Under the pieces are notes generated by a model, which saw only the letters and a program-made list of their open reading frames with translations, searched no databases and was not told the origin of the DNA. Position numbers and translations under genes: made by a program. From positions 62,001-126,000 of IMG/VR virus record IMGVR_UViG_3300009181_000033: a stretch of DNA of 64,000 nucleotides. One strand, 5' to 3'. Position 1 is the first letter of the stretch. Each line of letters begins with the position of its first letter. Below, piece after piece: positions 19,177 through 54,794 of this stretch.

Positions 19177-19226
19177 AAATCGGTCGGACTCCCACAAAGA
19201 GAATCCGACCGAAGTTGTTTTTTGTG
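19177..19226 (-). terminator. conserved hairpin, near-identical to 54743-54794
   Basis: CACAAAAAACAACTTCGGTCGGATTCTCTT.GTGGGAGTCCGACCGATTTT. Confidence 0.8.
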
Positions 19227-19238
19227 TTACCTAACGAA

Positions 19239-22200
19239 TCAACCAATTAGGGTGAATGGTGCAGTGGGTGGCGTGAAGTCTCCACTGTACAACGCAGTTC
19301 CCTTGGTGAATCGCACTTCGTCAATGTAGCCATTGAACTCAATTCCCAAAACAGTGGAATAGTCAAACACGTTGCCCAAAATCAAACCATTTTGAGCCAA
19401 GTTAAACGAAAATGTTGTTGAGCCATCGCACACACCGTTCAAGTAAACGTATACTGTGTTTCCTTTTCTAGAAACTGCAACGTGATACCAGGTGTTTAAT
19501 TGGATCGCAGTATTGCAAGTCAGATAGGTACCACCTGCTGTATAGAGCTTCAACTTATTCGCAGAGTTCGTACAGATGAGGAGACCATCCTGTGAACTAA
19601 CTCTGGTGTCAACCATACTATTGTAGTAGTCTCCAGGGAAACCCGTGCTCATGGCACTCATATTGAACCAATACTCTATTGTAAAGTCACCTGTTCCAAG
19701 CGCAAAGTCAGAAGAAGTCGCCGCAACCCTTGCGCCCGACCCTCTACCTCCTGGTAGATAGAGCGAAGAACTTCCAAATTTCGACTTGGTCGTTGAGATA
19801 GCAGTCCCGGTCCCATACGCTGTAAATGTCTTTGGTGAAGTTGAACTGTCCGTGAACGTTGTGCTTCCATTTGATCCCTCAAAGTGAAGCAAACAATTAT
19901 TCCCATCGGTAAATGGTGCAGTGGGTGGCGTGAAGCTGTTGTTGTAGGCACACTTTCCAACCAATATGCGGAATTCATCAAAGTAACCATTGGTTGTTCT
20001 GGCACCGCCGGCGGCTGTCGGACAATTTCCGATATAAATTGTATCAGTGTATAAGGTTCCTGTAGCCCCTGACGTTCCAACAAGATTTCCATCGTAATAG
20101 ATCTTTATTGGACCCGAGCTGGTTTCTCTTGTTACTGCGAAATGGTGCCAAGCATTTGCAGTGACTGTACCAGTCGCCGCCAATGAACCACCCCAGCTAG
20201 TACCGTTATATGACCAATACGAATACAATTGATTTGCACCAGTCACCATCAAAAGCAATCCTTTAAATTCATCACCTGTTATTATAAATTGCTCACCTGC
20301 GCTTAAAGCATTCAGGTAGAACCAACCCTCAATGGTGAAGGGACGGTCGAGGAGAGCAATGGGTCTAGCTTCGGTGCGATCCATTTTGACATAATTTGCA
20401 ACATTTCCATTTAGTTTTAGAGAAGAACCTCCAAATTTTGACTGCAATGTTGAAATTTGAGCGGCACCGATAAATGAAACTCTACAAGGCGCAATATTCG
20501 TTGTTTCGTCTATCGTTGAAGTTTGACCATTGATGCCATCAAAATTTAACAAAACTGCAGTCTTTGAATTGCCGGTAACTGGTGTGGTTGGAGCAGTGAA
20601 ATTTCCAGTATAAACTGCCTCACCTAATTGAACCCTTATGTTGTCCATGTAACCATCAAAAGGTGATATTGACTGGGCATGCGCAGCCAAACCTACGTAG
20701 AAATAACGGTAGGAACCAAATGTTGTATTGCAAGCTTGTGACAACACAGATGTACCATTAACATAAATGTTAAATGTGGATCCATTACGAACTGCTGCTA
20801 TGTGGTACCACTGATTAATCTGTGGAACAAACGAAGTGACCCCCGCATAACCGGTCGCATCATCAACAAATCTCAGTACATTTGTTGAACTTTGAATAAA
20901 CAATTGAGGACCAGCAACACCCGCAGAACCATTCCAGAACTCTATGAGATTTTGGAAACCAATGTTGTTGGAATTAAAGTAGAACCAACCTTCCATCGTG
21001 AAGTCTTGTGTTCCAAAGGAATAAGTGTTTGCACTTGGGTTTGCGAACTGGAGCTTGTTGGTGTTGGTGCCATTGAGGTAAAGGGATTTGCCACCGAACT
21101 TTGATTGGGCGGTGGAGGTGGCAACGGTGCCGATGCGATGCTGGGTTAGGGGAGATTGGGCAGAGTCTAAAAGGGGAGAAACGTCTTTTACGGTAACAGT
21201 ACTGTTGCCATTATTTGAAACAAATAATTTTGAATTTGCAGCAACAACACCATAAGGATTAGTAAATCCTGCAAAAGTTGTCGTAACTGAATTTGTTGAA
21301 ATGTCTATAACAGAAACTGTGTTTCCACTATAATTAGCAACATATAGTTTTTTGCCATCTGGACTCACAGATGATCCATATGGTGCTGCACCGACAGTGA
21401 TATCGGTTCCTTTTGTTGAGCTTGAAAAATAAACTGGTGACACGGTCCCGCTAGCATTAGTGTAATTTGAATAGTAAGCAGCGTTAGTTGCTTTTGTTGC
21501 AACATAAGCTCCGGAAAAACCGGTTAAAGTTGACAACAGAGATATAGCACCAGTATCTTGGTTTAAAGAATAAACCTTTACGCTAGATCCTAAGCTTACA
21601 TATAATTTAGTGCCATCAGACGATACTACTGGGGCATATACACCCCATGTCGTGTCTCCCAATAGTGTAGCCGAAGGTGTTGCGGCAGTTAAATCAATCC
21701 TATATAAACCTGCGTTTTGACATGCGACGAATAAAAATTTATCATTTGTAGTTATTGCCGACGAATGAACGCCAGTTCCTGTTGTCACAGAGCTAAAAGA
21801 GCCATTTGTTGTGTCTACAATATAAACTTTATTTTGACTGTAGTTAGTTCCATAAATTTTCGTACCCGTTGAATTTATTGTCAACTGGTGAATTTTATTA
21901 CCCTCTGTTTCGAGAGTTTGTGTTTTCGTTCCTGAGGCAACGTCAATTACATGAATTCCACTTCCCGAAGCGAGAGACCATGAACCAATATAAGCTTTTG
22001 CACCATCAGGCGAAAGAATACCTTGCATTGGTGTTGTGGCGCTTATTGTTGAGTCTGCCACCGAAGCAGCGTCATCGAAGTGCAGCAACATCTTCGTATA
22101 AGGATCAGTAGTGATCGTGGCGGTTCCATTGATAATCTGCTGGATGATAGAAGATGTCCTCTTACGAAGAGCGGTCTTCGACATGTCACCCTTGTTCTTG

Positions 22201-22241
22201 GCGACGACCTTGGTCATGTCGCCCTTAAATTTTATAGGCAT
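19239..22241 (-). CDS. large virion adhesin-like protein: YVTN beta-propeller + three LamG/concanavalin-like domains
   Basis: LYVANYSGNTVSVID; repeated SKFGGSS / FTIEGWFY / WYHIA / GYxDE units; true start MPIKFKG at 22241. Confidence 0.85.
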   Translation of the reverse strand: MPIKFKGDMTKVVAKNKGDMSKTALRKRTSSIIQQIINGTATITTDPYTKMLLHFDDAASVADSTISATTPMQGILSPDGAKAYIGSWSLASGSGIHVIDVASGTKTQTLETEGNKIHQLTINSTGTKIYGTNYSQNKVYIVDTTNGSFSSVTTGTGVHSSAITTNDKFLFVACQNAGLYRIDLTAATPSATLLGDTTWGVYAPVVSSDGTKLYVSLGSSVKVYSLNQDTGAISLLSTLTGFSGAYVATKATNAAYYSNYTNASGTVSPVYFSSSTKGTDITVGAAPYGSSVSPDGKKLYVANYSGNTVSVIDISTNSVTTTFAGFTNPYGVVAANSKLFVSNNGNSTVTVKDVSPLLDSAQSPLTQHRIGTVATSTAQSKFGGKSLYLNGTNTNKLQFANPSANTYSFGTQDFTMEGWFYFNSNNIGFQNLIEFWNGSAGVAGPQLFIQSSTNVLRFVDDATGYAGVTSFVPQINQWYHIAAVRNGSTFNIYVNGTSVLSQACNTTFGSYRYFYVGLAAHAQSISPFDGYMDNIRVQLGEAVYTGNFTAPTTPVTGNSKTAVLLNFDGINGQTSTIDETTNIAPCRVSFIGAAQISTLQSKFGGSSLKLNGNVANYVKMDRTEARPIALLDRPFTIEGWFYLNALSAGEQFIITGDEFKGLLLMVTGANQLYSYWSYNGTSWGGSLAATGTVTANAWHHFAVTRETSSGPIKIYYDGNLVGTSGATGTLYTDTIYIGNCPTAAGGARTTNGYFDEFRILVGKCAYNNSFTPPTAPFTDGNNCLLHFEGSNGSTTFTDSSTSPKTFTAYGTGTAISTTKSKFGSSSLYLPGGRGSGARVAATSSDFALGTGDFTIEYWFNMSAMSTGFPGDYYNSMVDTRVSSQDGLLICTNSANKLKLYTAGGTYLTCNTAIQLNTWYHVAVSRKGNTVYVYLNGVCDGSTTFSFNLAQNGLILGNVFDYSTVLGIEFNGYIDEVRFTKGTALYSGDFTPPTAPFTLIG

Positions 22242-22307
22242 AATAGTACTAATTTCCTTTCCGGAACTCCGCGAAAGTTCCGTCGACGTATAAATATAAT
22301 TCAATGT
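22201..22307 (-). repeat. 107-bp perfect inverted repeat, copy A (partner 51499-51605)
   Basis: Direct comparison; covers ATATTTA, a 5' UTR hairpin, the RBS and the first ~13 codons. Confidence 0.92.
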
Positions 22308-30520: not shown

Positions 30521-30861
30521 ATTCCTTGTTGTTTGGTTGCCGTTACTTTCTTAATTTACTCTGTGGTTGCCGACTTTGCACCGACTATTTTTCGTTTGCG
30601 ATTTTAATTTCTTCCTCCGTTGGAGGGCGCAGTTTGAAGCTGGAGGAAGGAATGACGAAGATTCCGTCGTAGATGAGATCCCCTGCCATGTTGAGGCAAC
30701 CCCCGATGGTGTCGATGATGGGGAAGGTCTCGCCGATGTAGTGATTCACGTAGACTCGTTTATTGACGTCGAAGTATATCCAGTCTTTGGTGAGTACCGC
30801 CATCAGGCGAGGTGTCGTGTTGTTGAGTTTTGGATAGAGAGGCTTTTGCTTTTCTTCCATG

Positions 30862-31212
30862 TCAGTAGTGTCCTGGTCGAGTGGTGTGACCCGACCAGGC
30901 GGTACCGTCCCAGATGTATGCATGTTCTGTGCCAAAATCTGGCCAAGCTTCTCGAAGCATCTCGTCGAGGTTGTCGTAGAAGACGAATTCCTTGTCTTCC
31001 CCACGATCCCTGGCGTATGCCACGGTCTCGGCGAGGGTGTCACCCAAGGAGCTCAGGTTGCCGAGCTCCACGAGTTCTCGAGCTAGCTTGGATGAGTTGT
31101 AATGATTCGTGAGGGTTGCGCCTACTCCCTCAGGGCGGCCGTCGTAGTGACAGTAAACGCCCTCGATGGATCCGTTAGCGTGAATGATTCCGATGCATGA
31201 GCGAGTTGACAT
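30862..31212 (-). CDS. conserved-looking phage hypothetical protein
   Basis: MSTRS.IG...GVYCHYDG.PEGVG..L. Confidence 0.75.
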   Translation of the reverse strand: MSTRSCIGIIHANGSIEGVYCHYDGRPEGVGATLTNHYNSSKLARELVELGNLSSLGDTLAETVAYARDRGEDKEFVFYDNLDEMLREAWPDFGTEHAYIWDGTAWSGHTTRPGHY

Positions 31213-31221
31213 GTGTACCTT

Positions 31222-31452
31222 TCAGTGATTGGATGCGAGGGCGAGAGGTTGGACTTCGGTGCGTAGTCTCTGGACGGTGGAGAGGAAGCCGATGTAGGCT
31301 TCGTCGATGGCATCGATCTCCCTGAAGTCAGGGTCGGTGGCGTTCTCCTCCAGGACTTGCAGCTCTTTGATGCGATTCTTCATCTGTCTCAGCTCGAATT
31401 CGAGTGAGGTGAGGTGAGACATCTTCAGGGTGTAGAACAGCTGAGGAATCAT
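31222..31452 (-). CDS. hypothetical protein
   Basis: RBS AAAGGAA, GC3 codon pattern. Confidence 0.6.
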   Translation of the reverse strand: MIPQLFYTLKMSHLTSLEFELRQMKNRIKELQVLEENATDPDFREIDAIDEAYIGFLSTVQRLRTEVQPLALASNH

Positions 31453-31463
31453 TCTTTTTCCTT

Positions 31464-31721
31464 TCAGTAGGAAGCCTGGCGACAGATGACTGGCTTTTGG
31501 CTTGACGGCATTAGGAGCCTCTTCTTGTAGCCGTTTCCGACATTGATGCAGTTGAAGTAGAAGACTGCTTGAGCCAGATCACCACGGAACGAGTAGCGGG
31601 TTCGGTAGCTACCCTTGCTGTACCGGCCGACCTGCACGAGGAACTCGGTGGCGGAGGAGTATGCAATGTGCTTGCCGTTGAGTGTTGCGGTCTTGAGGTT
31701 CGTCTGCATTCCGTTCATCAT
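31464..31721 (-). CDS. hypothetical protein
   Basis: GTGCAAAGTCAAC promoter upstream. Confidence 0.7.
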   Translation of the reverse strand: MMNGMQTNLKTATLNGKHIAYSSATEFLVQVGRYSKGSYRTRYSFRGDLAQAVFYFNCINVGNGYKKRLLMPSSQKPVICRQASY

Positions 31722-31963
31722 GATCTTAATCTACCTTGAGGATTGTTGACTTTGCACTCAGTCGAGAGAGGCCTTCAGATTCGCGATGCCGATCTCGAAC
31801 GCCCGGATGTCGAGAGGATCCGTGGCGGTACGCAGGGACTCCGTCATGCTGTCGAGCAGCGTTCGACGGTATTCCACCGGCAGATTGGTGAGGTCGAGCT
31901 TCTTAACTTCGGATCGGTTGGCTTCCATGGTTCTACTCTATCAGGTTGAGGTGGAACTTTTCA

Positions 31964-32188
31964 CTACCTGCCCCATTGCTGAGGAATCGACTTTCGAAGA
32001 ATCTCGAGGATTCCGCCGAAGTTGCCCAAATCATCATCATCATCGAGATCATCTAGTGCGGCACGAATCCGCTTCGCCTCCTCGAGGGTCATGCACATGG
32101 AGACACAGTCAGACTTACCTGGCACACCTGGTACATACTTTGTGATGATCATGATCTCTTTGTACTCCTTCTCAGTTGAGCTTTTCAC
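31964..32188 (-). CDS. hypothetical protein
   Basis: ORF track; real start may be an internal Met after a GTGAAA promoter variant. Confidence 0.5.
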   Translation of the reverse strand: MKSSTEKEYKEIMIITKYVPGVPGKSDCVSMCMTLEEAKRIRAALDDLDDDDDLGNFGGILEILRKSIPQQWGR

Positions 32189-32535
32189 ACTCGGCCGATG
32201 GCGGAAAGGAACTGCTTCTTCGCCTCGGCGCCGAGGACCGCACCGACCATCACGTAGAGCGCCTCGCGGAAGGACGTGAACTTGGCGAGGGTCGCCGAGA
32301 ACTCCATGACGTGGTTACCGTGGATGGGGGAGATGTAGGAGGCGTTCCGTTTGACCGCGTCATTGATCTCATCGAGTGAGCGGACGAGGCGACATCCGAT
32401 ACTCTCAAGTTCCTCAGCGTGTCGATCGACCGTCGCGGCGATGGTCAGGAGGTCGCACTGTGTGAGGGTCCACTCCCTCTCGTTGGGGGAGATGAGGGTG
32501 AGAACAGCGTTCTCGAACTTATTGGTGTTGTTCAT
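32185..32535 (-). CDS. hypothetical protein
   Basis: GTGCAA promoter 36 nt upstream. Confidence 0.7.
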   Translation of the reverse strand: MNNTNKFENAVLTLISPNEREWTLTQCDLLTIAATVDRHAEELESIGCRLVRSLDEINDAVKRNASYISPIHGNHVMEFSATLAKFTSFREALYVMVGAVLGAEAKKQFLSAIGRV

Positions 32536-33049
32536 AGATTAGTTATACTTCAGCGAATGTTGACTTTGCACTCACATGCAGAAGAAGAGCACCACGGTGG
32601 CGTAGAAGCAAGCTAGTGTGAAGCACCCGACGATTCCGTACGCCACCGTCCGCACCGCGAACTGCGCGGGAGAGATGCGTTCACCACGGCTGTTCACCAT
32701 CAGTTCCTTCAGCTCGTCAACCATGAGACAAGTGTACTCCGCAGAATGTTGACCTTGCACCGCTCCAAAAATATTTTTTATTTTCTTCCCTCCCCAGGAC
32801 CCTCCGACAATCCCCGGACTGCATCCCCAGGCTGCCCAGGATGCCCTCAGAATAGTCTTTGCCACCAGGACGGGTTGACATCCATGCCGGCATTTGAAAA
32901 CACTCCTGAAGGCATCCTGGCGCAAGTATGTCAAAGAGCGGGATTAGAATGGTGTCAAATCTGACCCATGGGTCTATCTCGAATCAGCTTGTTTTCAAAT
33001 GCCGGGTATGACAATAAATGTCACATTGACATGTGCTTTTTTGTGTACT

Positions 33050-33277
33050 TTAGAGAGCAGATGGGACAGTGGGTCTAGGGGGTAGGATGACTTCCTCGTC
33101 GTCGATGATTGAGGTGTCGATGAGATCGTTCATGTCCTTAGCAGACCTCTTAAGGTAATACCTCCCGCCGTCAACCGAAATGGAACCACACTTGCAGGTG
33201 ACGAAGTCATGCACGCCTCTGCTCTCGATGTTGTCGCTGCACTTCCTGCATTGAGCTGAGTTTCTGAGGATGCCCAT
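33050..33277 (-). CDS. small Zn-ribbon phage protein
   Basis: RNSAQCRKC.D.IES..HDFVTCKCG.ISVDGG; start at MGILRN. Confidence 0.75.
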   Translation of the reverse strand: MGILRNSAQCRKCSDNIESRGVHDFVTCKCGSISVDGGRYYLKRSAKDMNDLIDTSIIDDEEVILPPRPTVPSAL

Positions 33278-33290
33278 GGTGTTAAGCCTT

Positions 33291-37970: not shown

Positions 37971-37972
37971 TT

Positions 37973-39645: not shown

Positions 39646-39698
39646 GCTGTATGTTCTCCTGATTCGCTGTCAGTTGATAGTTTAGTTATGCTGCTTGC

Positions 39699-41662: not shown

Positions 41663-41709
41663 GTCGTTCGCTCCGAGTTATCGGGTGGCTCCATTGCCAC
41701 CTGATAGAA

Positions 41710-41985
41710 TTAGTATACCAAGCTGGTTGCCGACTTTGCACCGGCGATGTTCGTGCGGAAGCAGACGCGTCCGTTCTCGATAACATACTCCCATCCCATC
41801 AGCTGCGCAAAAGCATACGCCTCGCGGTGATCAATAGGACAGACAGGAGCATGGTCGAGGTGGTGGAAGTGGTTGCATGGGTTGTTGTCGTTGTCGAAGG
41901 CGTCCGGGCCCTCGACGATGAACGTGGTATCGAGCGGAGCATAGGTGGGGTTGTTGACGCTATCATCGAAGCAGACGTAGAGCAT
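41710..41985 (-). CDS. hypothetical protein
   Basis: RBS AAAGGA. Confidence 0.6.
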   Translation of the reverse strand: MLYVCFDDSVNNPTYAPLDTTFIVEGPDAFDNDNNPCNHFHHLDHAPVCPIDHREAYAFAQLMGWEYVIENGRVCFRTNIAGAKSATSLVY

Positions 41986-42017
41986 GATGTATTCCTTTCA
42001 GCACTGGGTTGAGGTGA

Positions 42018-42299
42018 TCAGTCGTTGAAGATCTCGATGGAGATCCCATCAGTCGACTTGAACTGGAGGGAGATGACGTCTCCGTGCATCCGCCTAGGGC
42101 GGTCAAAGACGAATAGCTTCGAGACGCCGGTCTTGGATGATCGCACGTAGAATCCCTCGTCCAGGGAATCGTTGCTCACCTGTGCCACACGGAAATTCGG
42201 AATGGAGCTCATCTCGCACGTGCCGAGCTTGCCATCCCAGACGAAGAGACGGCCGTCATATACAGGAACTTGCTGCTTTCCGTTAACCTTCATATTCAT
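42018..42299 (-). CDS. hypothetical protein
   Basis: GTGCAAAGTCAAC promoter upstream. Confidence 0.7.
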   Translation of the reverse strand: MNMKVNGKQQVPVYDGRLFVWDGKLGTCEMSSIPNFRVAQVSNDSLDEGFYVRSSKTGVSKLFVFDRPRRMHGDVISLQFKSTDGISIEIFND

Positions 42300-42352
42300 G
42301 GTTATACCTCCCCCGTTGTTGACTTTGCACCTTCAAAGAGAATTTTCTTCAG

Positions 42353-42544
42353 TCACCTTACGAAGACAGGAGCACACTCGTAGAGGGGAGAGCTGGAGAC
42401 CCTGATGTTGTAGTAACCCCTCTTCTCGAGGGCCGTGACGGCCGAGGGTACCTTATTGGAACTGACCTGCTTGCGTCCAGGCTTGCCTGCGGGAGTGCGG
42501 TAGGCGAGCTCATATACGCTGATCTTCTCGGCGAAGCTGCTCAT
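42353..42544 (-). CDS. hypothetical protein, first gene of the leftward arm
   Basis: Start MSSFAEK after AAAGGAA. Confidence 0.6.
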   Translation of the reverse strand: MSSFAEKISVYELAYRTPAGKPGRKQVSSNKVPSAVTALEKRGYYNIRVSSSPLYECAPVFVR

Positions 42545-42559
42545 GTCCAATTCCTTTCC

Positions 42560-42700
42560 ATAAATCAAAACTAACACTCGACAACGCGACATTGCACCAA
42601 AAAACAAGAAAAAAATTTCTTTGCGCAATATTGCGGTGCTTTTGAACAAATTTATTTTTGGTGTGCAAAGCGTGAACTGGGCGAGGTACAACAGGATAAT
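42560..42700. promoter_or_regulatory. back-to-back GTGCAA promoters with A/T-rich spacer: divergence point of the early-type block
   Basis: TTGCAC at ~42592 and GTGCAA at ~42663; coding strand switches here. Confidence 0.7.
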
Positions 42701-42702
42701 CG

Positions 42703-42942
42703 ATGGACTTCAACGATTTCCTGAAGGAAGCACTTGAACCTGACGTCAACCTGAGGCAGGGACAGAAGCTCATGATCAACCTTCACTCGGTTCGGAAAGA
42801 CCTATACGGGAAGCTCTTCAACGGCTCACTCGAAGGCAAGACTTTTTCGTGGGTGTTGTACGACTGTTTCTACGAAGACTAGAAGATGTGGGCGACAATT
42901 GAGTGGCTTGGAGAAAACTGGTGCAAAGTCGGCAACGAGTGA
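42703..42942 (+). pseudogene. small ORF with in-frame TAG at 42880
   Basis: MDFNDF...DCFYED*KMWATIEWLGENW reads on plausibly after the stop. Confidence 0.45.
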
Positions 42943-43313
42943 GGTGCAACTGAATCATGAACGAAGAAGTCAACGTGACGTTAACTGCTCGTGAGCTTGT
43001 CGACACGTATCGTGCCGTGCGATCCCTGATGGGTCACTCGTGTCGGACGAAGCTATCAGTAACTACTACGAGCGACTGGACAGAATTCACTCCAAACTGA
43101 TTGATGCAACTGTGCAAGTGGCTTCCAAGAACAAGGAGGATGGACAATGAGTAACACACGTAAGGTAACGAGACTTCTTATTGACATGATGGATAACGGC
43201 GTGCTTGATCCTAATAATCTGGCTCTGCTGTGTCTCGGTTACATGTCTGAAGATGACGTGGCTGATATGGCTCGCCTCAACGATCTTCTCGAGGAGGAGG
43301 AGGATGATGATGC

Positions 43314-43679
43314 ATGATTGAGCCAATAGTCGAATTCAGACTGGAGCGTGTGGAAAATCGGCCGGACCGGTTTAACTATTATCCCATAGGCAATGGCATG
43401 GTGGCGTCCATACAAGCTGGACATGCCAACTATTGTCATCCTCGAATTACAGATCCATCGTCTGACGCTTACACCGAATTTGAAGTTGCCCTATTCTTCC
43501 TCAACGAGTGGTACCACCCTCACACCAACGAGAAGCTCTGTGACAGAAAATGGGCTTCGCATTGGTCGCCTAACGACCAAGTTGGAGCCTACGTTCCCCG
43601 GGTAGAAGTTATCAACATGATCAACGACCTTCGAGATTATTTCAAGGTCACGTACGCAGGAAAGGAAACAGACACATGA
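43314..43679 (+). CDS. phage hypothetical protein
   Basis: NGMVASIQAG..NYCHPR; RBS GGAGG. Confidence 0.7.
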   Translation: MIEPIVEFRLERVENRPDRFNYYPIGNGMVASIQAGHANYCHPRITDPSSDAYTEFEVALFFLNEWYHPHTNEKLCDRKWASHWSPNDQVGAYVPRVEVINMINDLRDYFKVTYAGKETDT

Positions 43680-43975
43680 TGATCAAGGCGAATGACGTTG
43701 TCTTCTGGAAGGGTCCCAATGGTCTCTACCGCCGCTGGGCAGACGTGGTAGACACGAACGGTGACCAGGTAAAGATCAAGCTCCGCCACGACATTTTCGA
43801 CTACGACCCTTGCAACGGAAAGCGCCACCTGCGGGAAGGAGAGATCCTCAGTGTGCCAATCAACGAAGTCATTTACAACAGCGAATACTATCGATCGAAG
43901 GAGAAGATCAAGGATCACATGGAGTCAGTGAGGAAAGAAAGCAAGAAACCCATTGCCGTAGGAGAAATCTGGTGA
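43676..43975 (+). CDS. hypothetical SH3-like protein
   Basis: ATGA overlap; IKANDVV. Confidence 0.65.
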   Translation: MMIKANDVVFWKGPNGLYRRWADVVDTNGDQVKIKLRHDIFDYDPCNGKRHLREGEILSVPINEVIYNSEYYRSKEKIKDHMESVRKESKKPIAVGEIW

Positions 43976-44175
43976 AGAAAGTCATTTGCTTGCTGTTGCT
44001 TGCTTCTTTCACCCTGGTTTCAACAGCACAAGCTGGCACGGCCGAGTGCGCAACCATCACAGACCACGACACAAGAATGATGTGCTTTGCCTCCCAAACT
44101 AACAACTCCTCGTACTGCTCTTTCATCAAAGACCACGACAAGCGTGCACAGTGCCGCATTATGACGGGGAATTAA
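43972..44175 (+). CDS. small secreted Cys-repeat protein
   Basis: Signal peptide; C..I.DHD.R..C twice. Confidence 0.65.
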   Translation: MKKVICLLLLASFTLVSTAQAGTAECATITDHDTRMMCFASQTNNSSYCSFIKDHDKRAQCRIMTGN

Positions 44176-44228
44176 AATAATCTCACCCGTCGGTGCAAAG
44201 TCAACTCCGAACAAGGTAATCTAGAACC

Positions 44229-44948
44229 ATGAAGACGAAGAAGAGCACCGACGAGCTGGAAAACGACGACTTCATCATCGAATCCCCCGCCGGAGAATCC
44301 TCCGACGACTGGGACACCGTCTCCGATAACGTTCCACGCTCCATGCTCGGAGCTCCTTCAAAGGATCGATCAGCCTCACGACCGGACATCTCCAAGCTCC
44401 CCAGCGGAATCGGACCTGACGGAATCCCAACCTTCGTGCGAGGTGACAAGGTCGTCATCGAACGATACTCCGGAGCACTCAAGGGTCACCCGTACCTCGA
44501 CACCCGTACCTACGTCATCCAGAACGTAGACACGGTCACCGGAAAGATCACCATGTACGACGCCGCCCAAGGCCAGTTCGCCACCGACAACTGGAAGGCC
44601 GGACTGCAGAACGGCAACGTCTACAAGCTAGCCAAGAATACCACCATCGATCTCTCCTCCAAGCGCAAGCGCGGTCGTCCCCGCAAGAACCCCGACGCTC
44701 CCACCAACGTCGCCAAGCCCCCTCCCGCCCTCGACGCCAACGGCATGCCCGTCGTCAAGAAGCGCGGCCGTCCCGCAGGCTCAAAGAACCGTCCCAAGGA
44801 AGTCATCATCAACGAAAAGCGGGCAAAGAAGGACGCACGATTCTTCAAGCGCTACGCCAAGCACCCTTCCTCCCACCAACAGAAGGCCGATCCCAAGTGG
44901 ATCTTCCTCCTCCCCATGGTCGACCTCCTCAAGGTCCTCACCAGGTAA
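44229..44948 (+). CDS. AT-hook (HMGA-like) DNA-binding protein
   Basis: Acidic N-terminus; KRKRGRPRK and KKRGRPAGSKNRPK; promoter at 44193-44228. Confidence 0.75.
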   Translation: MKTKKSTDELENDDFIIESPAGESSDDWDTVSDNVPRSMLGAPSKDRSASRPDISKLPSGIGPDGIPTFVRGDKVVIERYSGALKGHPYLDTRTYVIQNVDTVTGKITMYDAAQGQFATDNWKAGLQNGNVYKLAKNTTIDLSSKRKRGRPRKNPDAPTNVAKPPPALDANGMPVVKKRGRPAGSKNRPKEVIINEKRAKKDARFFKRYAKHPSSHQQKADPKWIFLLPMVDLLKVLTR

Positions 44949-44951
44949 CCC

Positions 44952-45227
44952 ATGCAAGGCTCACTCTGGCGGGTGAAGATGCATGTCTACGGACACACCT
45001 TCAATGGGAACGGTGACATGTTCCTCTTGAAGCCAGGTGAGCTCGTCGTTGTAGGAGACGGAATGGTTCAAGGCGACATGCTAGGGTGGGCAGACTCACA
45101 ATTCAGACCATTCGATCGAAAACTCGTGAACGCCCATCTGTGGGTCAAGGTGCTCCTACCACGCCAGTGTTGGATGAATCGGACATACTTCAACCGTGAT
45201 TCCATGTGGCTGGATAGGGTCTCATGA
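44952..45227 (+). CDS. SH3-like small protein
   Basis: KPGELVV...WVKVL. Confidence 0.6.
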   Translation: MQGSLWRVKMHVYGHTFNGNGDMFLLKPGELVVVGDGMVQGDMLGWADSQFRPFDRKLVNAHLWVKVLLPRQCWMNRTYFNRDSMWLDRVS

Positions 45228-45439
45228 GGAGGTTCGAGGCGGGCGACTTGATCACCCTGAAATATGCGTACGCTTACTCCCCATCATCGATCGCACCCGC
45301 AATCGTACTCGAGGTCATTCGAGGTGGATACAAGGTGCTCTTCCCAAACGGCGTCTACGAACTCAGCTCAGACTACGCCCACGAATCATGCCAACTTCTT
45401 CAAGATTTCGGTGCAAAGTCAACATTCGCTGAAGTATAA
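45224..45439 (+). CDS. MKPGD-like small protein
   Basis: FEAGDLI...IVLE...YKVLFPNG. Confidence 0.65.
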   Translation: MRRFEAGDLITLKYAYAYSPSSIAPAIVLEVIRGGYKVLFPNGVYELSSDYAHESCQLLQDFGAKSTFAEV

Positions 45440-45473
45440 CTGAATTGAAGGTGAGGAAAGGAAGGGCAAGAAC

Positions 45474-45773
45474 GTGAACAAGAACGTGAACAACTTCGTC
45501 GTCCAGGTTATCGAGCACTACAACGACCGCGGCGGTGACGGTGGCATGGCCACGACCATCGTCGGTGTGGTGAAGACCCTCGAGGCGGGCATGCAGATGC
45601 TCGATGATATGGGTGCCAAGGAAGGCCGAGTCCTTCAGATCTTCCCTCCCATGGTCCGCGAGGACGGACGGCTCGTCCCTGGTCCGCCCGACGTCTTCCC
45701 TTACTGTGCTCCTCCTCAGAAGAAGGCCCGTGGCAAGAAGATCGCTGCGGATGTAGCCGAAACTGCTGAGTGA
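45474..45773 (+). CDS. hypothetical protein
   Basis: Promoter at ~45410 and RBS. Confidence 0.6.
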   Translation: MNKNVNNFVVQVIEHYNDRGGDGGMATTIVGVVKTLEAGMQMLDDMGAKEGRVLQIFPPMVREDGRLVPGPPDVFPYCAPPQKKARGKKIAADVAETAE

Positions 45774-46039
45774 GAAAATCTGACGGACAGTGAAAAGCTC
45801 AACATCAAAAGGAGTATAACAGGATCATGAACGAATTCAGTCACGCGGAACTGCGGCTCATCCTCGAAGGCCTTGATGTCGTCCGTGAACGGATGCGGGA
45901 AGATATCAGTGTCAACCTCAACCTCGGCGAGGAAGAGTACAACCAGGTGGTCAGGCTCCAAGACAAGATCATCGAGGCCCTGGAATCTCGCTGCTTCTAC
46001 TGAGTATAAAGTCAACACCCTCTGGAGTATAACTGAATC

Positions 46040-46408
46040 ATGAAGGGCATGAAGAAGGTTGTCACCCTCCCAGCCGGAACCAAATACCACTGGAATCGCT
46101 CACCAGAAGAAGTAAAAGATATCTACAGTCGACTCCCTCCACTCGATGACGCCGGCGAACCCACCATCGTCAACTCCACAGGCACCTCCCACCTCAATGA
46201 ACCAACGATAGTCACCATCACCAAAACACGTAAGATCGACTGGCACTCCTGGTTCAATAAACCCAAATTCCTCGTCGAAGGGCTAACCACCATCAACGGA
46301 AACCCAAAAATCATCATGTTCTCCCTACCCCCCAACGAGTTCTTCCGCCTCGAGGAAGAGGAAGTCATCGTTAACGCCTCGCGAGTCCGCCGGCCCGTGG
46401 CACGCTGA
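46040..46408 (+). CDS. hypothetical protein, paralogue of 46808-47167
   Basis: PAGT.Y, D.AGEP, WFNKP, TING.P shared. Confidence 0.75.
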   Translation: MKGMKKVVTLPAGTKYHWNRSPEEVKDIYSRLPPLDDAGEPTIVNSTGTSHLNEPTIVTITKTRKIDWHSWFNKPKFLVEGLTTINGNPKIIMFSLPPNEFFRLEEEEVIVNASRVRRPVAR

Positions 46409-46417
46409 ACTTCGCCA

Positions 46418-46453
46418 GTGCAAAGTCAACATCAAAAGGAGTATAATAGAATC
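46418..46453 (+). promoter_or_regulatory. consensus leaderless promoter GTGCAA-N18-TATAAT-N6-ATG
   Basis: Perfect -10 box; near-identical copies at ~45790 and 47135. Confidence 0.8.
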
Positions 46454-46618
46454 ATGGTCAGCAAGGATAAGCAGGCACAGGTTGCTCAGGACGCTCTCTA
46501 CGAGATTGGTTGGGAGATGACTCCTGCCGAGGCTCGTGAGCAGCTCGATTTCTTCGCGAAGATGAGCATTGATATTTGGCTTCAATCTGGTCAGACGGAC
46601 CAATTTGCTTGGGAGTGA
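46454..46618 (+). CDS. hypothetical protein
   Basis: Start reassigned to MVSKDK. Confidence 0.6.
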   Translation: MVSKDKQAQVAQDALYEIGWEMTPAEAREQLDFFAKMSIDIWLQSGQTDQFAWE

Positions 46619-46767
46619 TCATGACATTATACGATGTTGTTTATACTAATTCGTTGGGAATTCGCCAGCTCACCGTTGTATCTTCTTTGGTGATTAAAGA
46701 GACGATTGCTCTTTATTCTCGTGAAGGTGGAGTGATTTTTTCGATCAAGCAGCGGACATAACCGCTT

Positions 46768-46809
46768 GGGACTGTAGCACAATGGCAGTGCAGCTGGCTT
46801 TTAACCAGT
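46768..46809 (+). pseudogene. tRNA-Lys(TTT) 5' half without T arm
   Basis: GGGACTGTAGCACAATGGCAGTGCAGCTGGCTTTTAACCAGT followed by coding sequence. Confidence 0.8.
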
Positions 46810-47167
46810 GGCTCAACGGCTACGACCTGTGAAAGCAAGGGAGACGATCGTCATTCCGGCGGGCACCACGTACTACTACACCCGCACCAAGGAAGAGTGC
46901 GAAGACATCCGCCAACGTGACATCGCAACCGGCAACAACTACGACTCGGCAGGCGAACCAAAAATCTACAGCCGAATCACATCCAGCCGAATCCAAGAAA
47001 ACACCTTCTGCACGATCATCAAGAACCGCAACATCGAGTGGGACACTTGGTTCAATAAGCCATCCCACCTCCTCGAGGTGCTAGCAACGATAAACGGCGC
47101 ACCAAGAATTATTTTAGTCAAAGACCCACGCCGGGTGCAAAGTCAACATCAAAAGGAGTTTAACTAA
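46808..47167 (+). CDS. hypothetical protein, paralogue of 46040-46408
   Basis: Shared motifs. Confidence 0.7.
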   Translation: MAQRLRPVKARETIVIPAGTTYYYTRTKEECEDIRQRDIATGNNYDSAGEPKIYSRITSSRIQENTFCTIIKNRNIEWDTWFNKPSHLLEVLATINGAPRIILVKDPRRVQSQHQKEFN

Positions 47168-47170
47168 ACT

Positions 47171-47668
47171 ATGAACGCTGAACAACTCAAGGAGATTCTC
47201 CACCACCATGCCCTCTGGATCCTCAACCCCGAAGAGGGTTGCAGAGCGAATCTGAGTGGAGCGAATCTGAGCGGAGCGAATCTGTTCAGGGCGAATCTGA
47301 GCGAAGCGTTTCTGTGCGAAGCGTTTCTGTGGGGAGCGTATCTGAACGGAGCGTATCTGAACGGAGCTGATCTGAGTGGAGCGGATCTGAGCAGAGCGAA
47401 TCTGTGGGAAGCGAATCTGTTCAGGGCGTATCTGTGGGAAGCGAATCTGAGTGGAGCGAATCTGAGCGGAGCGAATCTGAGCAGAGCGAATCTGAGTGGA
47501 GCGAATCTGAGTGGAGCCGATCTGCGCGGAGCCGATCTGCTGGATGCAAAGTTCACAGTGGAACTGAAGGACGCAAGAAATCTTCACGCCGTTGTTTACC
47601 ATCCACAACAATTGCCATTTTTGGCACTGAACCCTAGTTTCCTGGAATCTGTGCAAAGTTCCACCTGA
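47171..47668 (+). CDS. pentapeptide repeat protein
   Basis: About 21 A(N/D/Y/F)LXX units encoded by a 15-bp tandem repeat. Confidence 0.95.
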   Translation: MNAEQLKEILHHHALWILNPEEGCRANLSGANLSGANLFRANLSEAFLCEAFLWGAYLNGAYLNGADLSGADLSRANLWEANLFRAYLWEANLSGANLSGANLSRANLSGANLSGADLRGADLLDAKFTVELKDARNLHAVVYHPQQLPFLALNPSFLESVQSST

Positions 47669-51498: not shown

Positions 51499-51605
51499 AC
51501 ATTGAATTATATTTATACGTCGACGGAACTTTCGCGGAGTTCCGGAAAGGAAATTAGTACTATTATGCCTATAAAATTTAAGGGCGACATGACCAAGGTC
51601 GTCGC
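51499..51605 (+). repeat. 107-bp perfect inverted repeat, copy B (partner 22201-22307)
   Basis: Direct comparison. Confidence 0.92.
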
Positions 51606-54600
51606 TAAAAACAAGGGTGATATGACAAAGACAACCCTCCGTAAAAGGGTATCACAGATTTTAAGTGGAGGATCTTCGGGTTCTTCAACAAATGACATCT
51701 ACACCAAGATGCTCCTTCATTTTGACGATACCACAACATCTTCATCTTCAATATCTGCATATTATCCTTTTAGGTGCATCAAATCTTTTGATGGAACAAA
51801 GTTATATGTGGGAACCCACGGTCCGGACACGGGAAGTCAAGGAATTCACGTAATTGATGTCGCAACCAATACAAAAATAAAAACAATTTCTACAACTGGC
51901 AGTGTAATATCTCTTGTTACAAATTCAACGGGAACTAGAATTTATCGTACAAATTACGGTGTGAACAGTTCCTCGAATAGTGGTTCAACAGTTGAAGTAA
52001 TCGATACGTCAAATGATGCTGTCTTAAGTACAATTACTGTTGGATCATCAACAATGTACATTGCAATAACTCCTGATGATAAATTTCTATATGTCACAAG
52101 AGAGTACGGGGGTTTATATCGAATAGATACAGCCACGTTAACCCTAACTGATCTAGGAATTACAACAGCAAAATTTTCACCCATAATATCATCTGATGGA
52201 ACAAAGTTAATTGTAAATGATTCTACATCGGTTTATTGTTACTCAATAAATAAAACGACGGGTGGTTTGACTTTAGTGACCACATTGACAGGTTTTACTA
52301 ATCCTTTTACGTCGTGTTCAGATTCCACTAACGTATATGTTATGAATAAAACTACTTCTGGAACTGTGATACCAGTATCATGGTCAACCTTTACAAAGGG
52401 AACTGCAATAAGCGTGGGCCAGGAACCTTATGGCGGTAGCGTAAGTTCAGATGGAAAACTGTACGTTCCAAACGTTGCTGGCAATACGATTTCTGTCATT
52501 GACACTGCGACCTTGAAAGTTGTTGGTACGTTAACTGGATATACTTCGCCTCGTGATGCAATTGTTTTTGGTTCAAAGTTATTTGTTGCTAATTACACAG
52601 CGAGTGGTTCCATTTCCGTTATTGATCAAGCATCTTTCTCCGATGCAGCCCCGTCAGCAATAAAACAATTTAAGTTTGGCACCGTGACCACTTCCACCGC
52701 CCAGTCCAAGTTCGGTGGCAAGTCACTCGCCCTCGACGGCACCAACACCAACAAGCTCCAGTTTGCCAATCCAAAGACGAAGGCAATGGATTTCTCAAAT
52801 CAACCGTTCTGTGTTGAAGGTTGGTTCTACTTGAATTCACTAACAGGCAATTCATGGTTATTCGGATTTGCCAACAGTGATACAGGCGATTGGCAAGGTC
52901 TCCATGTCGAATTAGATCCCTCTAATCGATTTGCAGTTTACTTGACAACGAATGGTGCAACATGGGATTTGGGTCAACCAGGTATTTCAACAACGACAAC
53001 ACCTTCAATTAATTCTTGGTTTCACCTTGCCTTGACAAGGGAGACAGTCGGGGGCGATATAAAATTGTTCCATAACGGAACCCTGATCGGAACCAAGTCA
53101 ACAACTGCCACGCTTTACACTGGCGATTACATGCAAATTGGTAGAACCAATTATGTTAACGCCACTAGGGTTAATGGTTACGTCGATGATTTCCGTGTTG
53201 TTGTTGGTTCTTGTCCTTACTCTGCATCTGCCTTCGTTGTTCCCACGGCAGAGCTCACTGCAACCGCAGATACAAAGTTGCTCATCAAGGGATCAACCAC
53301 CATCAAGGATGAATCCTCGCTCAACCTCTACACGCAAGCACTTGGTTCTGCCGCATCCTCAACGGTTCAGTCCAAATTCGGTGGTTCTTCCATCAAGATT
53401 GCCTCTGCAACGGGTGATTACGTTAGGGTTTACAACAACACCCAACCCATCGACCTCCGCGACCGTGATTTTACTATCGAGGGTTGGTTCTATTTCAATC
53501 AAAAGAATGTTGGCTATCAACCTCTTTTGGGGATGTATACCGATGGTGACATGCAAGGATTTAACATGTGCCATGAGTCTGGTTCCGGACAAATAGTTTT
53601 TGCATATCTTGCAAATGGATCGTGGGGATCATTAAACTCTGGAGTGAATGCAGACACTGGTTCATGGCATCACATTGCTGTGACTAGATCTGGAACTTCC
53701 CTAAGATTCTTTTTTAACGGACAATTAAAGGCAACAAATACACTCGCTGCTGGTGCATCATTTGCAAGTAAAGACTATATTTTTGCGGGTTACTATCAAC
53801 ACCTGCCTGGCGGTGCAAAAACTTTCAACGGTTACATTGACGAAGTCCGCATATTGGTTGAAAAGTGTGCGTATGCTACCAACTTTACTCCTCAAACAAC
53901 ACAACATCAATTAGGTGCCAATATTGGTCTACCTAACACTGCTGCCCTCACGAATTCATTTACAAATACCACCTTGCCAGGTCTAAAGGTTTGGTACAAG
54001 GCAGACTCGATAACTGGATTGGCGGATGGTGCTTCCGTTACAAGTTGGGTTGACAGTTCAGGCAATGGAAAGAGTCTATCAGGCACAGGGGCAATCTATC
54101 AAGCAACGGGCATCAATGGTAGACCCATTGTTTACTTCAATGGTTCAGGTAATCTCACGGCAACCAATACAGGTCTCCCAACGGGTAATCCAGCAAGGAC
54201 AGTTTATACGGTTGGTTATAAGGGTGGAACTAACGCAAATCAAGAAATGTGGGGTTGGGGTGATAACTCAACCGGTCGCGTGGGTCTTTGGTGGGGCAAT
54301 AATGCTGTATGTTATGAATCCATGGGACCGACGACGGGATGGTATTCTACGGTTGTGGGGAACAAATTTATTTTAACTCATGCCCACGGCGCCGGAGAGA
54401 ACCTCACCCAAAATCCACTTTATGCAAACGGGGTTCCTACAACAATGTCAGCGACAGGAACGGCCAACATAGGCACTAGCACTATTGCTGTTGGTCACAT
54501 TCCAGGTTATACTGACGCCCTTTATTGGGTGGGTGGGTGTGCAGAAATATTGGTATTTGATAGAAAACATACTAATTCAGAGCGCCAGCAAGTTGAAGCA

Positions 54601-54633
54601 TATCTGGCAGAAAAGTATGGAATCTCCGTTTAG
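51565..54633 (+). CDS. large virion adhesin-like protein: YVTN beta-propeller, two LamG domains and a different C-terminal lectin module
   Basis: Paralogue of 19239-22241; C-terminal WYKADS...VTSWVDSSGNG...VEAYLAEKYG. Confidence 0.85.
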   Translation: MPIKFKGDMTKVVAKNKGDMTKTTLRKRVSQILSGGSSGSSTNDIYTKMLLHFDDTTTSSSSISAYYPFRCIKSFDGTKLYVGTHGPDTGSQGIHVIDVATNTKIKTISTTGSVISLVTNSTGTRIYRTNYGVNSSSNSGSTVEVIDTSNDAVLSTITVGSSTMYIAITPDDKFLYVTREYGGLYRIDTATLTLTDLGITTAKFSPIISSDGTKLIVNDSTSVYCYSINKTTGGLTLVTTLTGFTNPFTSCSDSTNVYVMNKTTSGTVIPVSWSTFTKGTAISVGQEPYGGSVSSDGKLYVPNVAGNTISVIDTATLKVVGTLTGYTSPRDAIVFGSKLFVANYTASGSISVIDQASFSDAAPSAIKQFKFGTVTTSTAQSKFGGKSLALDGTNTNKLQFANPKTKAMDFSNQPFCVEGWFYLNSLTGNSWLFGFANSDTGDWQGLHVELDPSNRFAVYLTTNGATWDLGQPGISTTTTPSINSWFHLALTRETVGGDIKLFHNGTLIGTKSTTATLYTGDYMQIGRTNYVNATRVNGYVDDFRVVVGSCPYSASAFVVPTAELTATADTKLLIKGSTTIKDESSLNLYTQALGSAASSTVQSKFGGSSIKIASATGDYVRVYNNTQPIDLRDRDFTIEGWFYFNQKNVGYQPLLGMYTDGDMQGFNMCHESGSGQIVFAYLANGSWGSLNSGVNADTGSWHHIAVTRSGTSLRFFFNGQLKATNTLAAGASFASKDYIFAGYYQHLPGGAKTFNGYIDEVRILVEKCAYATNFTPQTTQHQLGANIGLPNTAALTNSFTNTTLPGLKVWYKADSITGLADGASVTSWVDSSGNGKSLSGTGAIYQATGINGRPIVYFNGSGNLTATNTGLPTGNPARTVYTVGYKGGTNANQEMWGWGDNSTGRVGLWWGNNAVCYESMGPTTGWYSTVVGNKFILTHAHGAGENLTQNPLYANGVPTTMSATGTANIGTSTIAVGHIPGYTDALYWVGGCAEILVFDRKHTNSERQQVEAYLAEKYGISV

Positions 54634-54742
54634 CTCAAGTTGCAATGTATAATGTGGTTTTGAATGACTCACAAGTCCTCCAAAATTACAATGCGATGAA
54701 AGATCAACTTAGATTTACACTAACACTATAAGTCTAAGGCAA

Positions 54743-54794
54743 CACAAAAAACAACTTCGGTCGGATTCTCTTCGTGGGAGTCCGACCGATTTTT
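54743..54794 (+). terminator. conserved hairpin terminator
   Basis: Near-identical to 19177-19226. Confidence 0.8.

What the first reader, a model, noticed from the sequence alone, without database searches (positions are those of the whole stretch)
19177..54794. Outward-facing adhesin paralogues with a perfect 107-bp inverted repeat and mosaic conserved linkers
Seen: 22201-22307 and 51499-51605 are identical in inverted orientation, and the terminators nearly so, while the gene bodies are highly diverged. Short GC-richer islands stay similar at the DNA level (about 21035-21130 versus 52680-52770, STAQSKFGGKSL..GTNTNKLQFANP; also TKMLLHFDD and the FTIEGWFY block) between AT-rich variable modules. 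LamG modules appear in a different order: the NIGFQ/NVGYQ-type and TRET..G.IK-type domains are swapped, and the last domains differ. Inference: gene conversion or crossover at these linkers shuffles receptor-binding modules and would invert the ~29-kb interval, with no dedicated invertase. The RadA-like ATPase lies inside that interval.
Basis: partly seen in the sequence, partly recalled or inferred. Interest (0 to 1): 0.72.

Follow-up and report, generated by a model that had tools for sequence, protein, structure and literature searches.

The report
Paired phage adhesin genes, shared start
A 298-kb T4-like freshwater phage carries two old, diverged copies of a large surface-binding protein gene that face away from each other 29 kb apart, and whose first 107 bases have been made identical again by recombination; this is an ordinary way for phage host-recognition genes to evolve, and nothing shows a switching device.

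Summary
Bases 22201-22307 and 51499-51605 are a perfect 107-bp inverted repeat, the terminators are 96% alike, and the gene bodies share only about 44% of residues.

The window lies in a complete 297,894-bp virus record with a T4 Gp23-type capsid gene. Genes A (19239-22241, minus strand) and B (51565-54633, plus strand) each encode a short N-terminal segment, a 7-bladed YVTN-type beta-propeller and three LamG jelly rolls.

The perfect repeat is 66 nt of upstream leader plus the first 13.7 codons. Only two other proteins share this architecture. In LamG1 and LamG2, A groups with one of them and B with the other. In the first 45 residues, A groups with B (12 of 12 informative sites). So the 5' end was homogenised after the copies diverged.

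- The "conserved linkers" are LamG core strands, equally conserved between genomes.
- The claimed swap of LamG order is rejected (AU p = 0.004).
- B's last domain is a different type.
- No invertase or reverse transcriptase serves the locus.
- Every available assembly has one orientation, but the data have little power.
- A crossover within the 107 bp would leave both proteins unchanged.

The parts
19239..22241 (-). Gene A, 1000 aa. Layout: N-terminal segment (aa 1-60), 7-bladed YVTN-type beta-propeller (aa ~62-355, nt 21177-22058), LamG1 (nt ~20562-21125), LamG2 (nt ~19902-20462), LamG3 (nt ~19242-19805).
   Evidence: The public gene call has exactly this 1000-aa product. Pfam gives Laminin_G_3 at 169.8 bits in 3 stretches and Lactonase propeller at 32.9 bits. 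The AlphaFold model has mean pLDDT 79, and above 90 for the propeller. Foldseek's best PDB match is 1l0q, a YVTN propeller, followed by neurexin and laminin LNS arrays.
51565..54633 (+). Gene B, 1022 aa counted from the start codon it shares with A (the open frame reaches back to 51424). Layout: N-terminal segment, propeller (~51742-52632), LamG1 (~52684-53259), LamG2 (~53350-53919), then a third domain of a different type (~53962-54630).
   Evidence: Homology to A begins 66 nt before this ATG and is absent further upstream. Pfam gives Laminin_G_3 at 125.9 bits in 2 stretches. The C-terminal domain has no Pfam hit but matches PHROG 10356, 'virion structural protein'.
22201..22307 (-). Left arm of the perfect 107-bp inverted repeat: 66 nt upstream of A's start codon (22242-22307) plus the first 41 nt of coding sequence. 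The upstream part holds an AT-rich stretch, a 6-bp hairpin and a Shine-Dalgarno-like AAAGGAAA.
   Evidence: No sigma-70 consensus is found. The RNA fold is no more stable than shuffled sequence (z = -0.22). The motif occurs nowhere else in the genome.
51499..51605 (+). Right arm of the perfect 107-bp inverted repeat, covering the same elements ahead of and inside gene B.
22153..22200 (-). Extension of the repeat into codons 15-30 of A, with 11 mismatches to its partner at 51606-51653.
19176..19232 (-). Intrinsic terminator of gene A: a 9-bp outer stem (TCGGTCGGA / TCCGACCGA) followed by a T run.
54737..54793 (+). Intrinsic terminator of gene B, 96% identical to A's.
10880..10926 (-). Third and only other copy of the same terminator hairpin in the genome. 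It follows gene C.
10947..11825 (-). Gene C, 292 aa. It has no family match. Its first 24 residues resemble the N-terminus of A and B (13 of 24 identical). It may be a third protein carrying the same N-terminal handle.
   Evidence: There are no Pfam or PHROG hits. The link is weak: E = 0.006 for one pairwise comparison.
21035..21131 (-). GC-rich island at the start of LamG1, encoding the opening strands with the motif SKFGGKSL..GTNT.KLQFANP. Its partner in B is 52678-52774, at 85% identity.
   Evidence: It is conserved in all four family members, so it is a core motif of the domain and not a linker.
52678..52774 (+). The LamG1-start island of gene B.
35689..36465 (-).
   Evidence: Pfam KaiC (PF06745) scores 39.6 bits, above its cut-off. 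RecA scores only 18.3 bits, below its cut-off. PHROG matches to DnaB-like and UvsX-like families are weak.
30569..47176 (.). GC-rich core of the interval (50-56% GC). It holds about 14 copies of a promoter-like motif and is transcribed outward from about 42.3-42.9 kb, leftward towards A and rightward towards B.
   Evidence: gene tables.

Best explanation
A and B are two anciently duplicated paralogues of an adhesin-like protein, probably used for host recognition, in a T4-like freshwater jumbo phage. Each has a short N-terminal segment, a YVTN-type beta-propeller and three LamG jelly rolls.

The genes sit back to back, 29 kb apart, each at the outer end of one arm of an outward-transcribed block.

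The perfect 107-bp inverted repeat is their shared leader, ribosome-binding region and first 13.7 codons. It is identical because homologous recombination between the two inverted copies (gene conversion) recently overwrote one 5' end with the other. The rest of each gene kept its own much older lineage. As a result both proteins keep the same expression signals and the same N-terminal segment while carrying different binding modules.

On longer time-scales, modules have also been exchanged with outside alleles. B's last domain is of a different type. An independent lake population carries a diverged patch in A's LamG2.

Shown here: the repeat, the domain architecture, the discordant trees, the excess of identical codons, and the absence of an invertase or reverse transcriptase.

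Inferred: that conversion rather than selection alone keeps the identity; that the N-terminal segment anchors the proteins to the virion; and that the proteins bind host surface carbohydrate.
For: - The genome is a complete 297,894-bp virus record. It has a Gp23-type capsid gene, a baseplate wedge gene and collagen-like tail fibre genes, and a RecA/UvsX homologue.
- The domain architecture is supported.
- The LamG arrays match phage families annotated as baseplate wedge or virion structural proteins.
- The repeat's anatomy is shown.
- Trees are discordant along the gene. In the N-terminal 45 residues, 12 of 12 informative sites group A+B against P0001+P0002. In the LamG1 body, 18 of 20 group A+P0001 against B+P0002.
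- In the domain tree, A_D1+P1_D1 has support 98/85, B_D1+P2_D1 100/99, B_D2+P2_D2 98/84 and A_D3+P1_D3 98/81.
- In the first 14 codons, 11 of 12 identical residues use the identical codon, against 41% in the rest of the gene (p = 4e-4).
- The relatives carry an unrelated leader and N-terminus. This stretch is therefore not universally constrained.
- The gene-call tables list no recombinase family inside the interval. The genome's only Resolvase match is the TnpA of an IS607-like element outside the window, and there is no Phage_integrase match. There is no reverse transcriptase.
- Run X2, an independent 2025 sample, has gene A at about 99% identity except for a patch at 19952-20317 that is under 85% identical. 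The ends of that patch match neither B, P0001 nor P0002.
Against: - Only two relatives exist, both on short contigs from other samples. It is unknown whether they are a paralogue pair in one genome.
- Selection on a shared regulatory and translation-initiation region could contribute to the identity.
- Virion location and binding function rest on domain-level similarity only. Neither gene lies in the baseplate module, and the neighbours of the relatives are replication genes.
- The N-terminal 60 residues are modelled with low confidence.
Confidence: 0.7

Rival explanations
1. One reading: an invertase-free recombinational switch. Recombination between the inverted copies repeatedly flips the 29-kb interval, and crossovers at internal conserved stretches create chimeric adhesins, diversifying host range.
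For: - The perfect 107-bp inverted repeat exists.
- The phage encodes a RecA/UvsX homologue and is T4-like. From general knowledge, such phages recombine very actively.
- The family is mosaic.
- The interval is transcribed outward on both arms, so a flipped isomer would keep gene orientation relative to A and B and should be viable.
Against: - All assemblies have one orientation, and none breaks at the repeat.
- A crossover in the 107 bp changes neither protein, because both bodies lie outside the flipped segment.
- The internal islands have at most 26 nt of perfect match and are equally conserved between genomes.
- The LamG order is not swapped.
- The diverged patch in run X2 does not come from B.
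- The available data have low power: depth is about 16x, and the k=31 Logan contigs cannot bridge the repeat.
Confidence: 0.12
2. Purifying selection alone keeps the 107 bp identical, because it holds a promoter or operator, a ribosome-binding region and an N-terminal signal that both genes need. No recent gene conversion occurred.
For: - The repeat coincides with the leader plus the translation-initiation region.
- B has no co-directional upstream gene, so its promoter probably lies in these 66 nt.
Against: - The match is perfect across 107 nt, including the hairpin loop, the spacers and 11 of 12 synonymous choices.
- There is no unusual RNA structure and no recognisable promoter consensus.
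- The relatives use an unrelated leader and N-terminus.
- Selection cannot explain why the N-terminal residues follow a different tree from the gene bodies.
Confidence: 0.15
3. The repeat, or the arrangement of the two genes, is an assembly artefact.
For: The three JGI assemblies are 100% identical over the loci compared and may share reads, so they are not independent.
Against: - The 107-nt Logan contig has twice the depth of its flanks in the source run.
- Contig overlaps of 123 nt suggest an assembly word longer than the repeat. This is an inference.
- The co-assembly breaks elsewhere, at about 31.9 kb and 48.1 kb, not at the repeat.
- An independent 2025 run holds both flanks.
Confidence: 0.03

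Closest known systems
Mosaic tail-fibre adhesins of T-even phages (gp37/gp38), where recombination at short conserved motifs swaps specificity modules (Tetart et al. 1998; cited from my own knowledge, not checked here)
   Same: Both are host-recognition genes of T4-like phages built from modules with discordant histories, with short conserved stretches between variable parts.
   Different: - The domains here are a beta-propeller plus LamG jelly rolls, not a fibrous gp37.
- The conserved stretches are domain-core strands.
- No exchange between A and B is seen at those stretches. The only A-B exchange is at the extreme 5' end.
Phages with several receptor-binding proteins that share an N-terminal anchor, such as the Alcyoneusvirus phages RaK2 and phiK64-1 and the Agtrevirus tailspikes (PMC10253068 and PMC10791037, found; I read only their titles and abstracts)
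   Same: Two, possibly three, proteins in one phage share a short N-terminal segment and differ in their C-terminal binding parts.
   Different: - Anchoring to the virion is not shown here.
- The two genes are 29 kb apart and inverted, not clustered.
- The identity reaches into the untranslated leader.
Invertase-driven tail-fibre switches: the Mu G segment with Gin, the P1 C segment with Cin, and shufflons (from my own knowledge)
   Same: In both, inverted repeats in host-range genes delimit a segment that could flip.
   Different: - There is no invertase here.
- The variable parts lie outside, not inside, the segment that could flip.
- The repeat is 107 bp of general homology, not a ~26-bp crossover site.
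- Only one orientation has been seen.
Concerted evolution of inverted paralogues by RecA-dependent gene conversion, as in tufA/tufB of Salmonella (Abdulkarim and Hughes 1996; from my own knowledge)
   Same: In both, inverted paralogues in one replicon are kept alike by conversion, and the same recombination can occasionally invert the interval between them.
   Different: Only the first ~107-160 nt are homogenised here. The rest of each gene has diverged beyond the reach of recombination.
LamG-rich structural proteins of cyanomyoviruses (annotated 'baseplate wedge initiator') and the YVTN propeller of the Methanosarcina surface-layer protein, PDB 1l0q
   Same: The LamG arrays are about 33% identical to those of Synechococcus phage proteins. 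The propeller is the best Foldseek match in the PDB.
   Different: The propeller-plus-three-LamG architecture has only two full-length clusters among 1.84 billion representative proteins, and only four proteins in all.

Membership tests
Laminin_G_3 / concanavalin A-like lectin domain (Pfam PF13385) | A profile match above the curated cut-off. | tested here: met
   A scores 169.8 bits in 3 stretches and B 125.9 bits in 2 stretches, against a cut-off of 27.6. B's third domain alone has no Pfam hit.
YVTN / lactonase-type 7-bladed beta-propeller | A profile match and a seven-bladed fold. | tested here: met
   For A, PF10282 scores 32.9 bits against a cut-off of 21.7. For B it scores 20.1 bits, just under the cut-off. 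The model of A shows a confident propeller at residues 62-355. The best PDB match is 1l0q (E = 1e-15).
Phage receptor-binding or tail-fibre protein | The protein is part of the virion and binds the host surface. | not testable with these tools
   There is only domain-level similarity to PHROG families annotated as baseplate wedge or virion structural proteins and to cyanophage structural proteins.
Site-specific invertible host-range segment (Gin/Cin/Hin type) | A serine invertase encoded beside the segment. | tested here: not met
   The only Resolvase-family gene lies at genome bases 50434-51063 and overlaps a TnpB gene, as in IS607-like elements. It is about 30 kb from gene A. No recombinase family appears in the gene tables of the interval.
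Site-specific invertible host-range segment (Gin/Cin/Hin type) | Alternative variable gene ends lie inside the invertible segment, so that flipping changes the protein. | tested here: not met
   Both variable gene bodies lie outside the two repeat arms.
Site-specific invertible host-range segment (Gin/Cin/Hin type) | Both orientations are present in a population. | tested here: inconclusive
   Only one orientation appears in all assemblies. The Logan contigs stop at the repeat, and no raw reads were available.
Diversity-generating retroelement target | A reverse transcriptase in the genome, with a template repeat. | tested here: not met
   There is no RVT_1 match in the genome.
Concerted evolution by gene conversion between paralogues | A segment in which the paralogues of one genome group together, against the tree of the rest of the gene. 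| tested here: met
   In the N-terminus, 12 of 12 informative sites support A+B. In the LamG1 body, 18 of 20 support A+P0001 against B+P0002. The domain clades are well supported. Caveat: the genomes that carry P0001 and P0002 are unknown.
Concerted evolution by gene conversion between paralogues | Excess identity at synonymous and non-coding positions within the converted tract. | tested here: met
   The 66 non-coding bases are identical. In the first 14 codons, 11 of 12 identical residues use identical codons, against a background of 0.41 (p = 4e-4).

The most novel reading that the evidence does not exclude
The 107-bp repeat supports a low-level flip-flop of the 29-kb outward-transcribed block, driven by the phage's own RecA/UvsX. 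The phage would then exist as two genome isomers, and rare crossovers deeper in the genes would create propeller/LamG chimeras. That would be an invertase-free counterpart of the Mu and P1 host-range switches.
Probability: 0.1. Interest if true: 0.6.

Novelty: new member of a known kind. Interest (0 to 1): 0.3.

Why it matters
This locus is a clean natural example of two things in one pair of phage host-recognition genes. The expression signals and N-terminal segment stay uniform through gene conversion, while the binding modules diverge and are replaced.

The propeller-plus-three-LamG architecture is rare. Only four proteins were found, so it marks an uncharacterised adhesin type in freshwater jumbo phages.

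The finding does not reveal a new mechanism. If both genome isomers were found, it would show that general recombination alone can flip a large block of a phage genome.

Tried and rejected
- **Cultured phage relatives.** A megablast of both genes against 50,697 phage records found no match.
- **More family members.** I ran scans of IMG/VR with A, B, P0001 and P0002, one metagenome scan with the four-protein alignment, and a profile search of 1.84 billion representative proteins. Beyond the four known proteins, these returned only LamG-level matches. A second genome carrying a paralogue pair could therefore not be examined.
- **Orientation from public runs.** Only Logan contigs were served. They end at the repeat, so they say nothing about orientation. 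Several apparent joints and loose ends in run X2 turned out to be contigs of gene B laid on A's conserved islands.
- **Diversity-generating retroelement.** Rejected: no reverse transcriptase.
- **Invertase.** Rejected.
- **A structured RNA in the 107 nt.** Rejected: z = -0.22, and no Rfam family other than tRNAs matches in the window.
- **Sigma-70 promoter in the shared leader.** None found.
- **T4 late-promoter motif TATAAATA.** It occurs only 6 times in the genome. In the shared leader it occurs only on the opposite strand.
- **The terminators as a genome-wide repeat family.** Rejected: there are only three copies, all in the window.
- **LamG1 split by insertion of the propeller.** The idea came from the LLHFDD strand motif at residues 49-57. 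The model is too uncertain there (pLDDT about 31) to decide.


Full report
**What the window is.** The window is bases 62001-126000 of a single 297,894-bp contig. The contig has 42.9% GC and a 123-bp overlap between its ends. IMG/VR lists it as a complete virus. It encodes:
- a T4 Gp23-type major capsid protein;
- a gp6-like baseplate wedge protein and collagen-like tail fibre proteins;
- a RecA/UvsX homologue;
- eleven tRNAs inside the window.

The runs that hold it are freshwater metagenomes. It is therefore a T4-like freshwater jumbo phage. No cultured phage matches it at the DNA level.

**Check of the observation.**
- The two arms, 22201-22307 and 51499-51605, are identical and extend by no further base. 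The similarity continues to 160 nt at 92%.
- The terminators are 57 nt at 96% identity, and the scan reads them as a hairpin plus a T run.
- This hairpin family has exactly three copies in the genome. The third, at 10880-10926, follows gene C.
- The island 21035-21131 / 52678-52774 is 97 nt at 85% identity and is locally GC-rich.
- The proteins share 44% of residues over 845 aa.
- After the 107-nt match, the longest exact matches between the two genes are 32 and 20 nt in the terminators and 26 nt in the island.

**Anatomy of the genes.**
- The public gene call for A begins at the ATG at 22241 and gives 1000 aa.
- Homology between the two loci begins 66 nt upstream of that ATG and is absent beyond it. 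B's true start is therefore almost certainly the equivalent ATG at 51565, not the ATG at 51424 where the open frame begins.
- The perfect repeat is thus 66 nt of leader plus the first 41 coding bases. The leader holds an AT-rich stretch, a 6-bp hairpin and a Shine-Dalgarno-like AAAGGAAA.
- It has no sigma-70 consensus and no unusual RNA stability. It occurs nowhere else in the genome.
- The AlphaFold model of A (mean pLDDT 79) shows a poorly defined N-terminal 60 residues with one helix. It also shows a confident seven-bladed propeller at 62-355 and three jelly rolls.
- Foldseek's best PDB match is the YVTN propeller of an archaeal surface-layer protein. Neurexin and laminin LNS arrays follow.
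- Among viral models, the matches are concanavalin-like proteins of uncultured tailed phages, cyanophage structural proteins and a putative adhesin of Pseudomonas phage PaBG.
- PHROG families annotated as baseplate wedge or virion structural proteins match the LamG arrays. About 330 phage records do as well, mostly cyanomyoviruses.
- A host-recognition role is the best reading. It rests on domain-level similarity only.

**Relatives and trees.**
- Only two other proteins share the full architecture. P0001 is 51% identical to A and P0002 is 47% identical. Both sit on short contigs from other metagenomes.
- A profile search of 1.84 billion representative proteins found no further full-length cluster.
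- Sliding-window identities, domain-by-domain comparison, a maximum-likelihood tree of 49 LamG domains and counts of informative sites agree on the following:
  - In LamG1 and LamG2, A pairs with P0001 and B pairs with P0002.
  - In LamG3, A, P0001 and P0002 form one clade, while B carries an unrelated domain type.
  - In the first 45 residues, A pairs with B and P0001 pairs with P0002 (12 of 12 informative sites).
- The relatives also have an unrelated leader.
- The duplication that produced A and B is therefore older than the split from the relatives. The 5' end of A and B must have been made alike afterwards.
- In the first 14 codons, 11 of 12 identical residues use the identical codon, against 41% elsewhere in the gene (p = 4e-4).
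- Gene conversion between the inverted copies is the simplest explanation. Selection on shared signals may help to preserve the result.

**The "linkers" and the "swap".**
- The conserved islands encode the opening strands of each LamG domain. The same motif recurs at the start of all three domains.
- In the main island, codon identity at identical residues is 0.55-0.70 for five of the six pairs, including pairs from different genomes, against a background of 0.36-0.46. The island therefore does not mark exchange between A and B.
- All four second domains form one clade (support 100/99).
- Forcing B's second domain to group with the first domains of A and P0001 costs 33 log-likelihood units (AU p = 0.0037).
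- A single clade of all four first domains is not rejected (p = 0.29).
- The LamG order is therefore not swapped.

**Inversion.**
- The three JGI assemblies hold this genome as follows:
  - two give it as one contig;
  - the third, a co-assembly, gives it as three contigs.
- All have the same orientation across both repeat arms. They are 100% identical over the loci compared and are probably not independent.
- The co-assembly breaks at about 31.83-31.95 kb and 48.10-48.20 kb, not at the repeat. No repeats lie at those break points.
- The Logan contigs (word size 31) end at the repeat and cannot show orientation. The 107-nt contig has twice the depth of its flanks.
- No invertase, tyrosine recombinase or reverse transcriptase serves the locus.
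- A crossover within the 107 bp lies in identical sequence, with both gene bodies outside the flipped segment. It would change neither protein.
- The interval is transcribed outward from about 42.3-42.9 kb on both arms (gene tables). A flipped isomer would therefore keep the same orientation logic and should be viable.
- Occasional flipping in a phage that has its own recombinase is plausible, but it has not been shown.

**Population variation.** An independent 2025 run (X2) holds the phage at about 99% identity. Gene A there has a patch at 19952-20317, in the C-terminal half of LamG2, that is under 85% identical. The ends of that patch match neither B nor the two relatives. This points to exchange with outside alleles, not between A and B.

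**Verdict.** It is wrong about the domain swap and about the role of the linkers, and it is unsupported on inversion. The locus is a good but ordinary example of modular, partly concerted evolution of phage adhesin paralogues.

Noticed in passing
window 30569-47176: The core of the interval is GC-rich (50-56%, against 43% for the genome). It holds about 14 copies of a roughly 35-nt promoter-like motif: GTGCAAAGTCAAC, then about 10 nt, then TATAAC-like, then ATG 5-8 nt later. Copies at 30569-42318 lie on the minus strand and copies at 42921-47135 on the plus strand, so the block is transcribed outward from about 42.3-42.9 kb.
   Followed up: partly
window ~31830-31952 and ~48105-48205: In the co-assembly 3300010885 the genome is split into three contigs. 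The 16,376-nt contig is almost exactly the GC-rich core. No repeats lie at the break points, which suggests strain variation at the borders of this block.
   Followed up: partly
window 10947-11825 (-) and 10880-10926: A 292-aa protein with no family match starts with a segment like the A/B N-terminus (13 of 24 residues identical). It is followed by the third copy of the A/B terminator hairpin.
   Followed up: partly
G000:C1:49234-51063 (about 11-13 kb before the window); window 1651-2832 (+) and 12597-13688 (-): There is an IS607-like pair: a 209-aa serine recombinase overlapping a 406-aa TnpB. Two more TnpB genes lie inside the window.
   Followed up: partly
G000:C1:210602-212099: The RecA/UvsX homologue matches in two pieces, about 650 nt apart and in different open frames. 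The gene may be interrupted.
   Followed up: no
window 19952-20317: In the independent 2025 freshwater run X2, gene A is about 99% identical except for this patch in LamG2, which is under 85% identical and matches neither B nor the relatives.
   Followed up: partly
window 26512-29232 and 35554-35628: There are eleven tRNA genes, all on the minus strand. They include two tRNA-Met and two tRNA-Lys.
   Followed up: no
window 33291-34607 (-) and 38527-39645 (-): The GC-rich core contains a DUF2201 metallopeptidase/VWA-like protein and an AAA_5 (MoxR-like) ATPase. The longer opposite-strand ORF at 33270-34724 has no family match and is probably spurious.
   Followed up: no
window 56716-57804 (+); L020; G000 around bases 144185 and 285380: The phage encodes a full DnaJ. 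It also has homologues of the IF-1-like and PhoH-like genes that flank P0002 in its own contig.
   Followed up: no
window 58597-61269 (+): This 890-aa protein has internal 157-nt repeats (58848 and 59283, 82% identical). It weakly matches phage structural and tail-fibre families, plus a short Arr-ms stretch.
   Followed up: no
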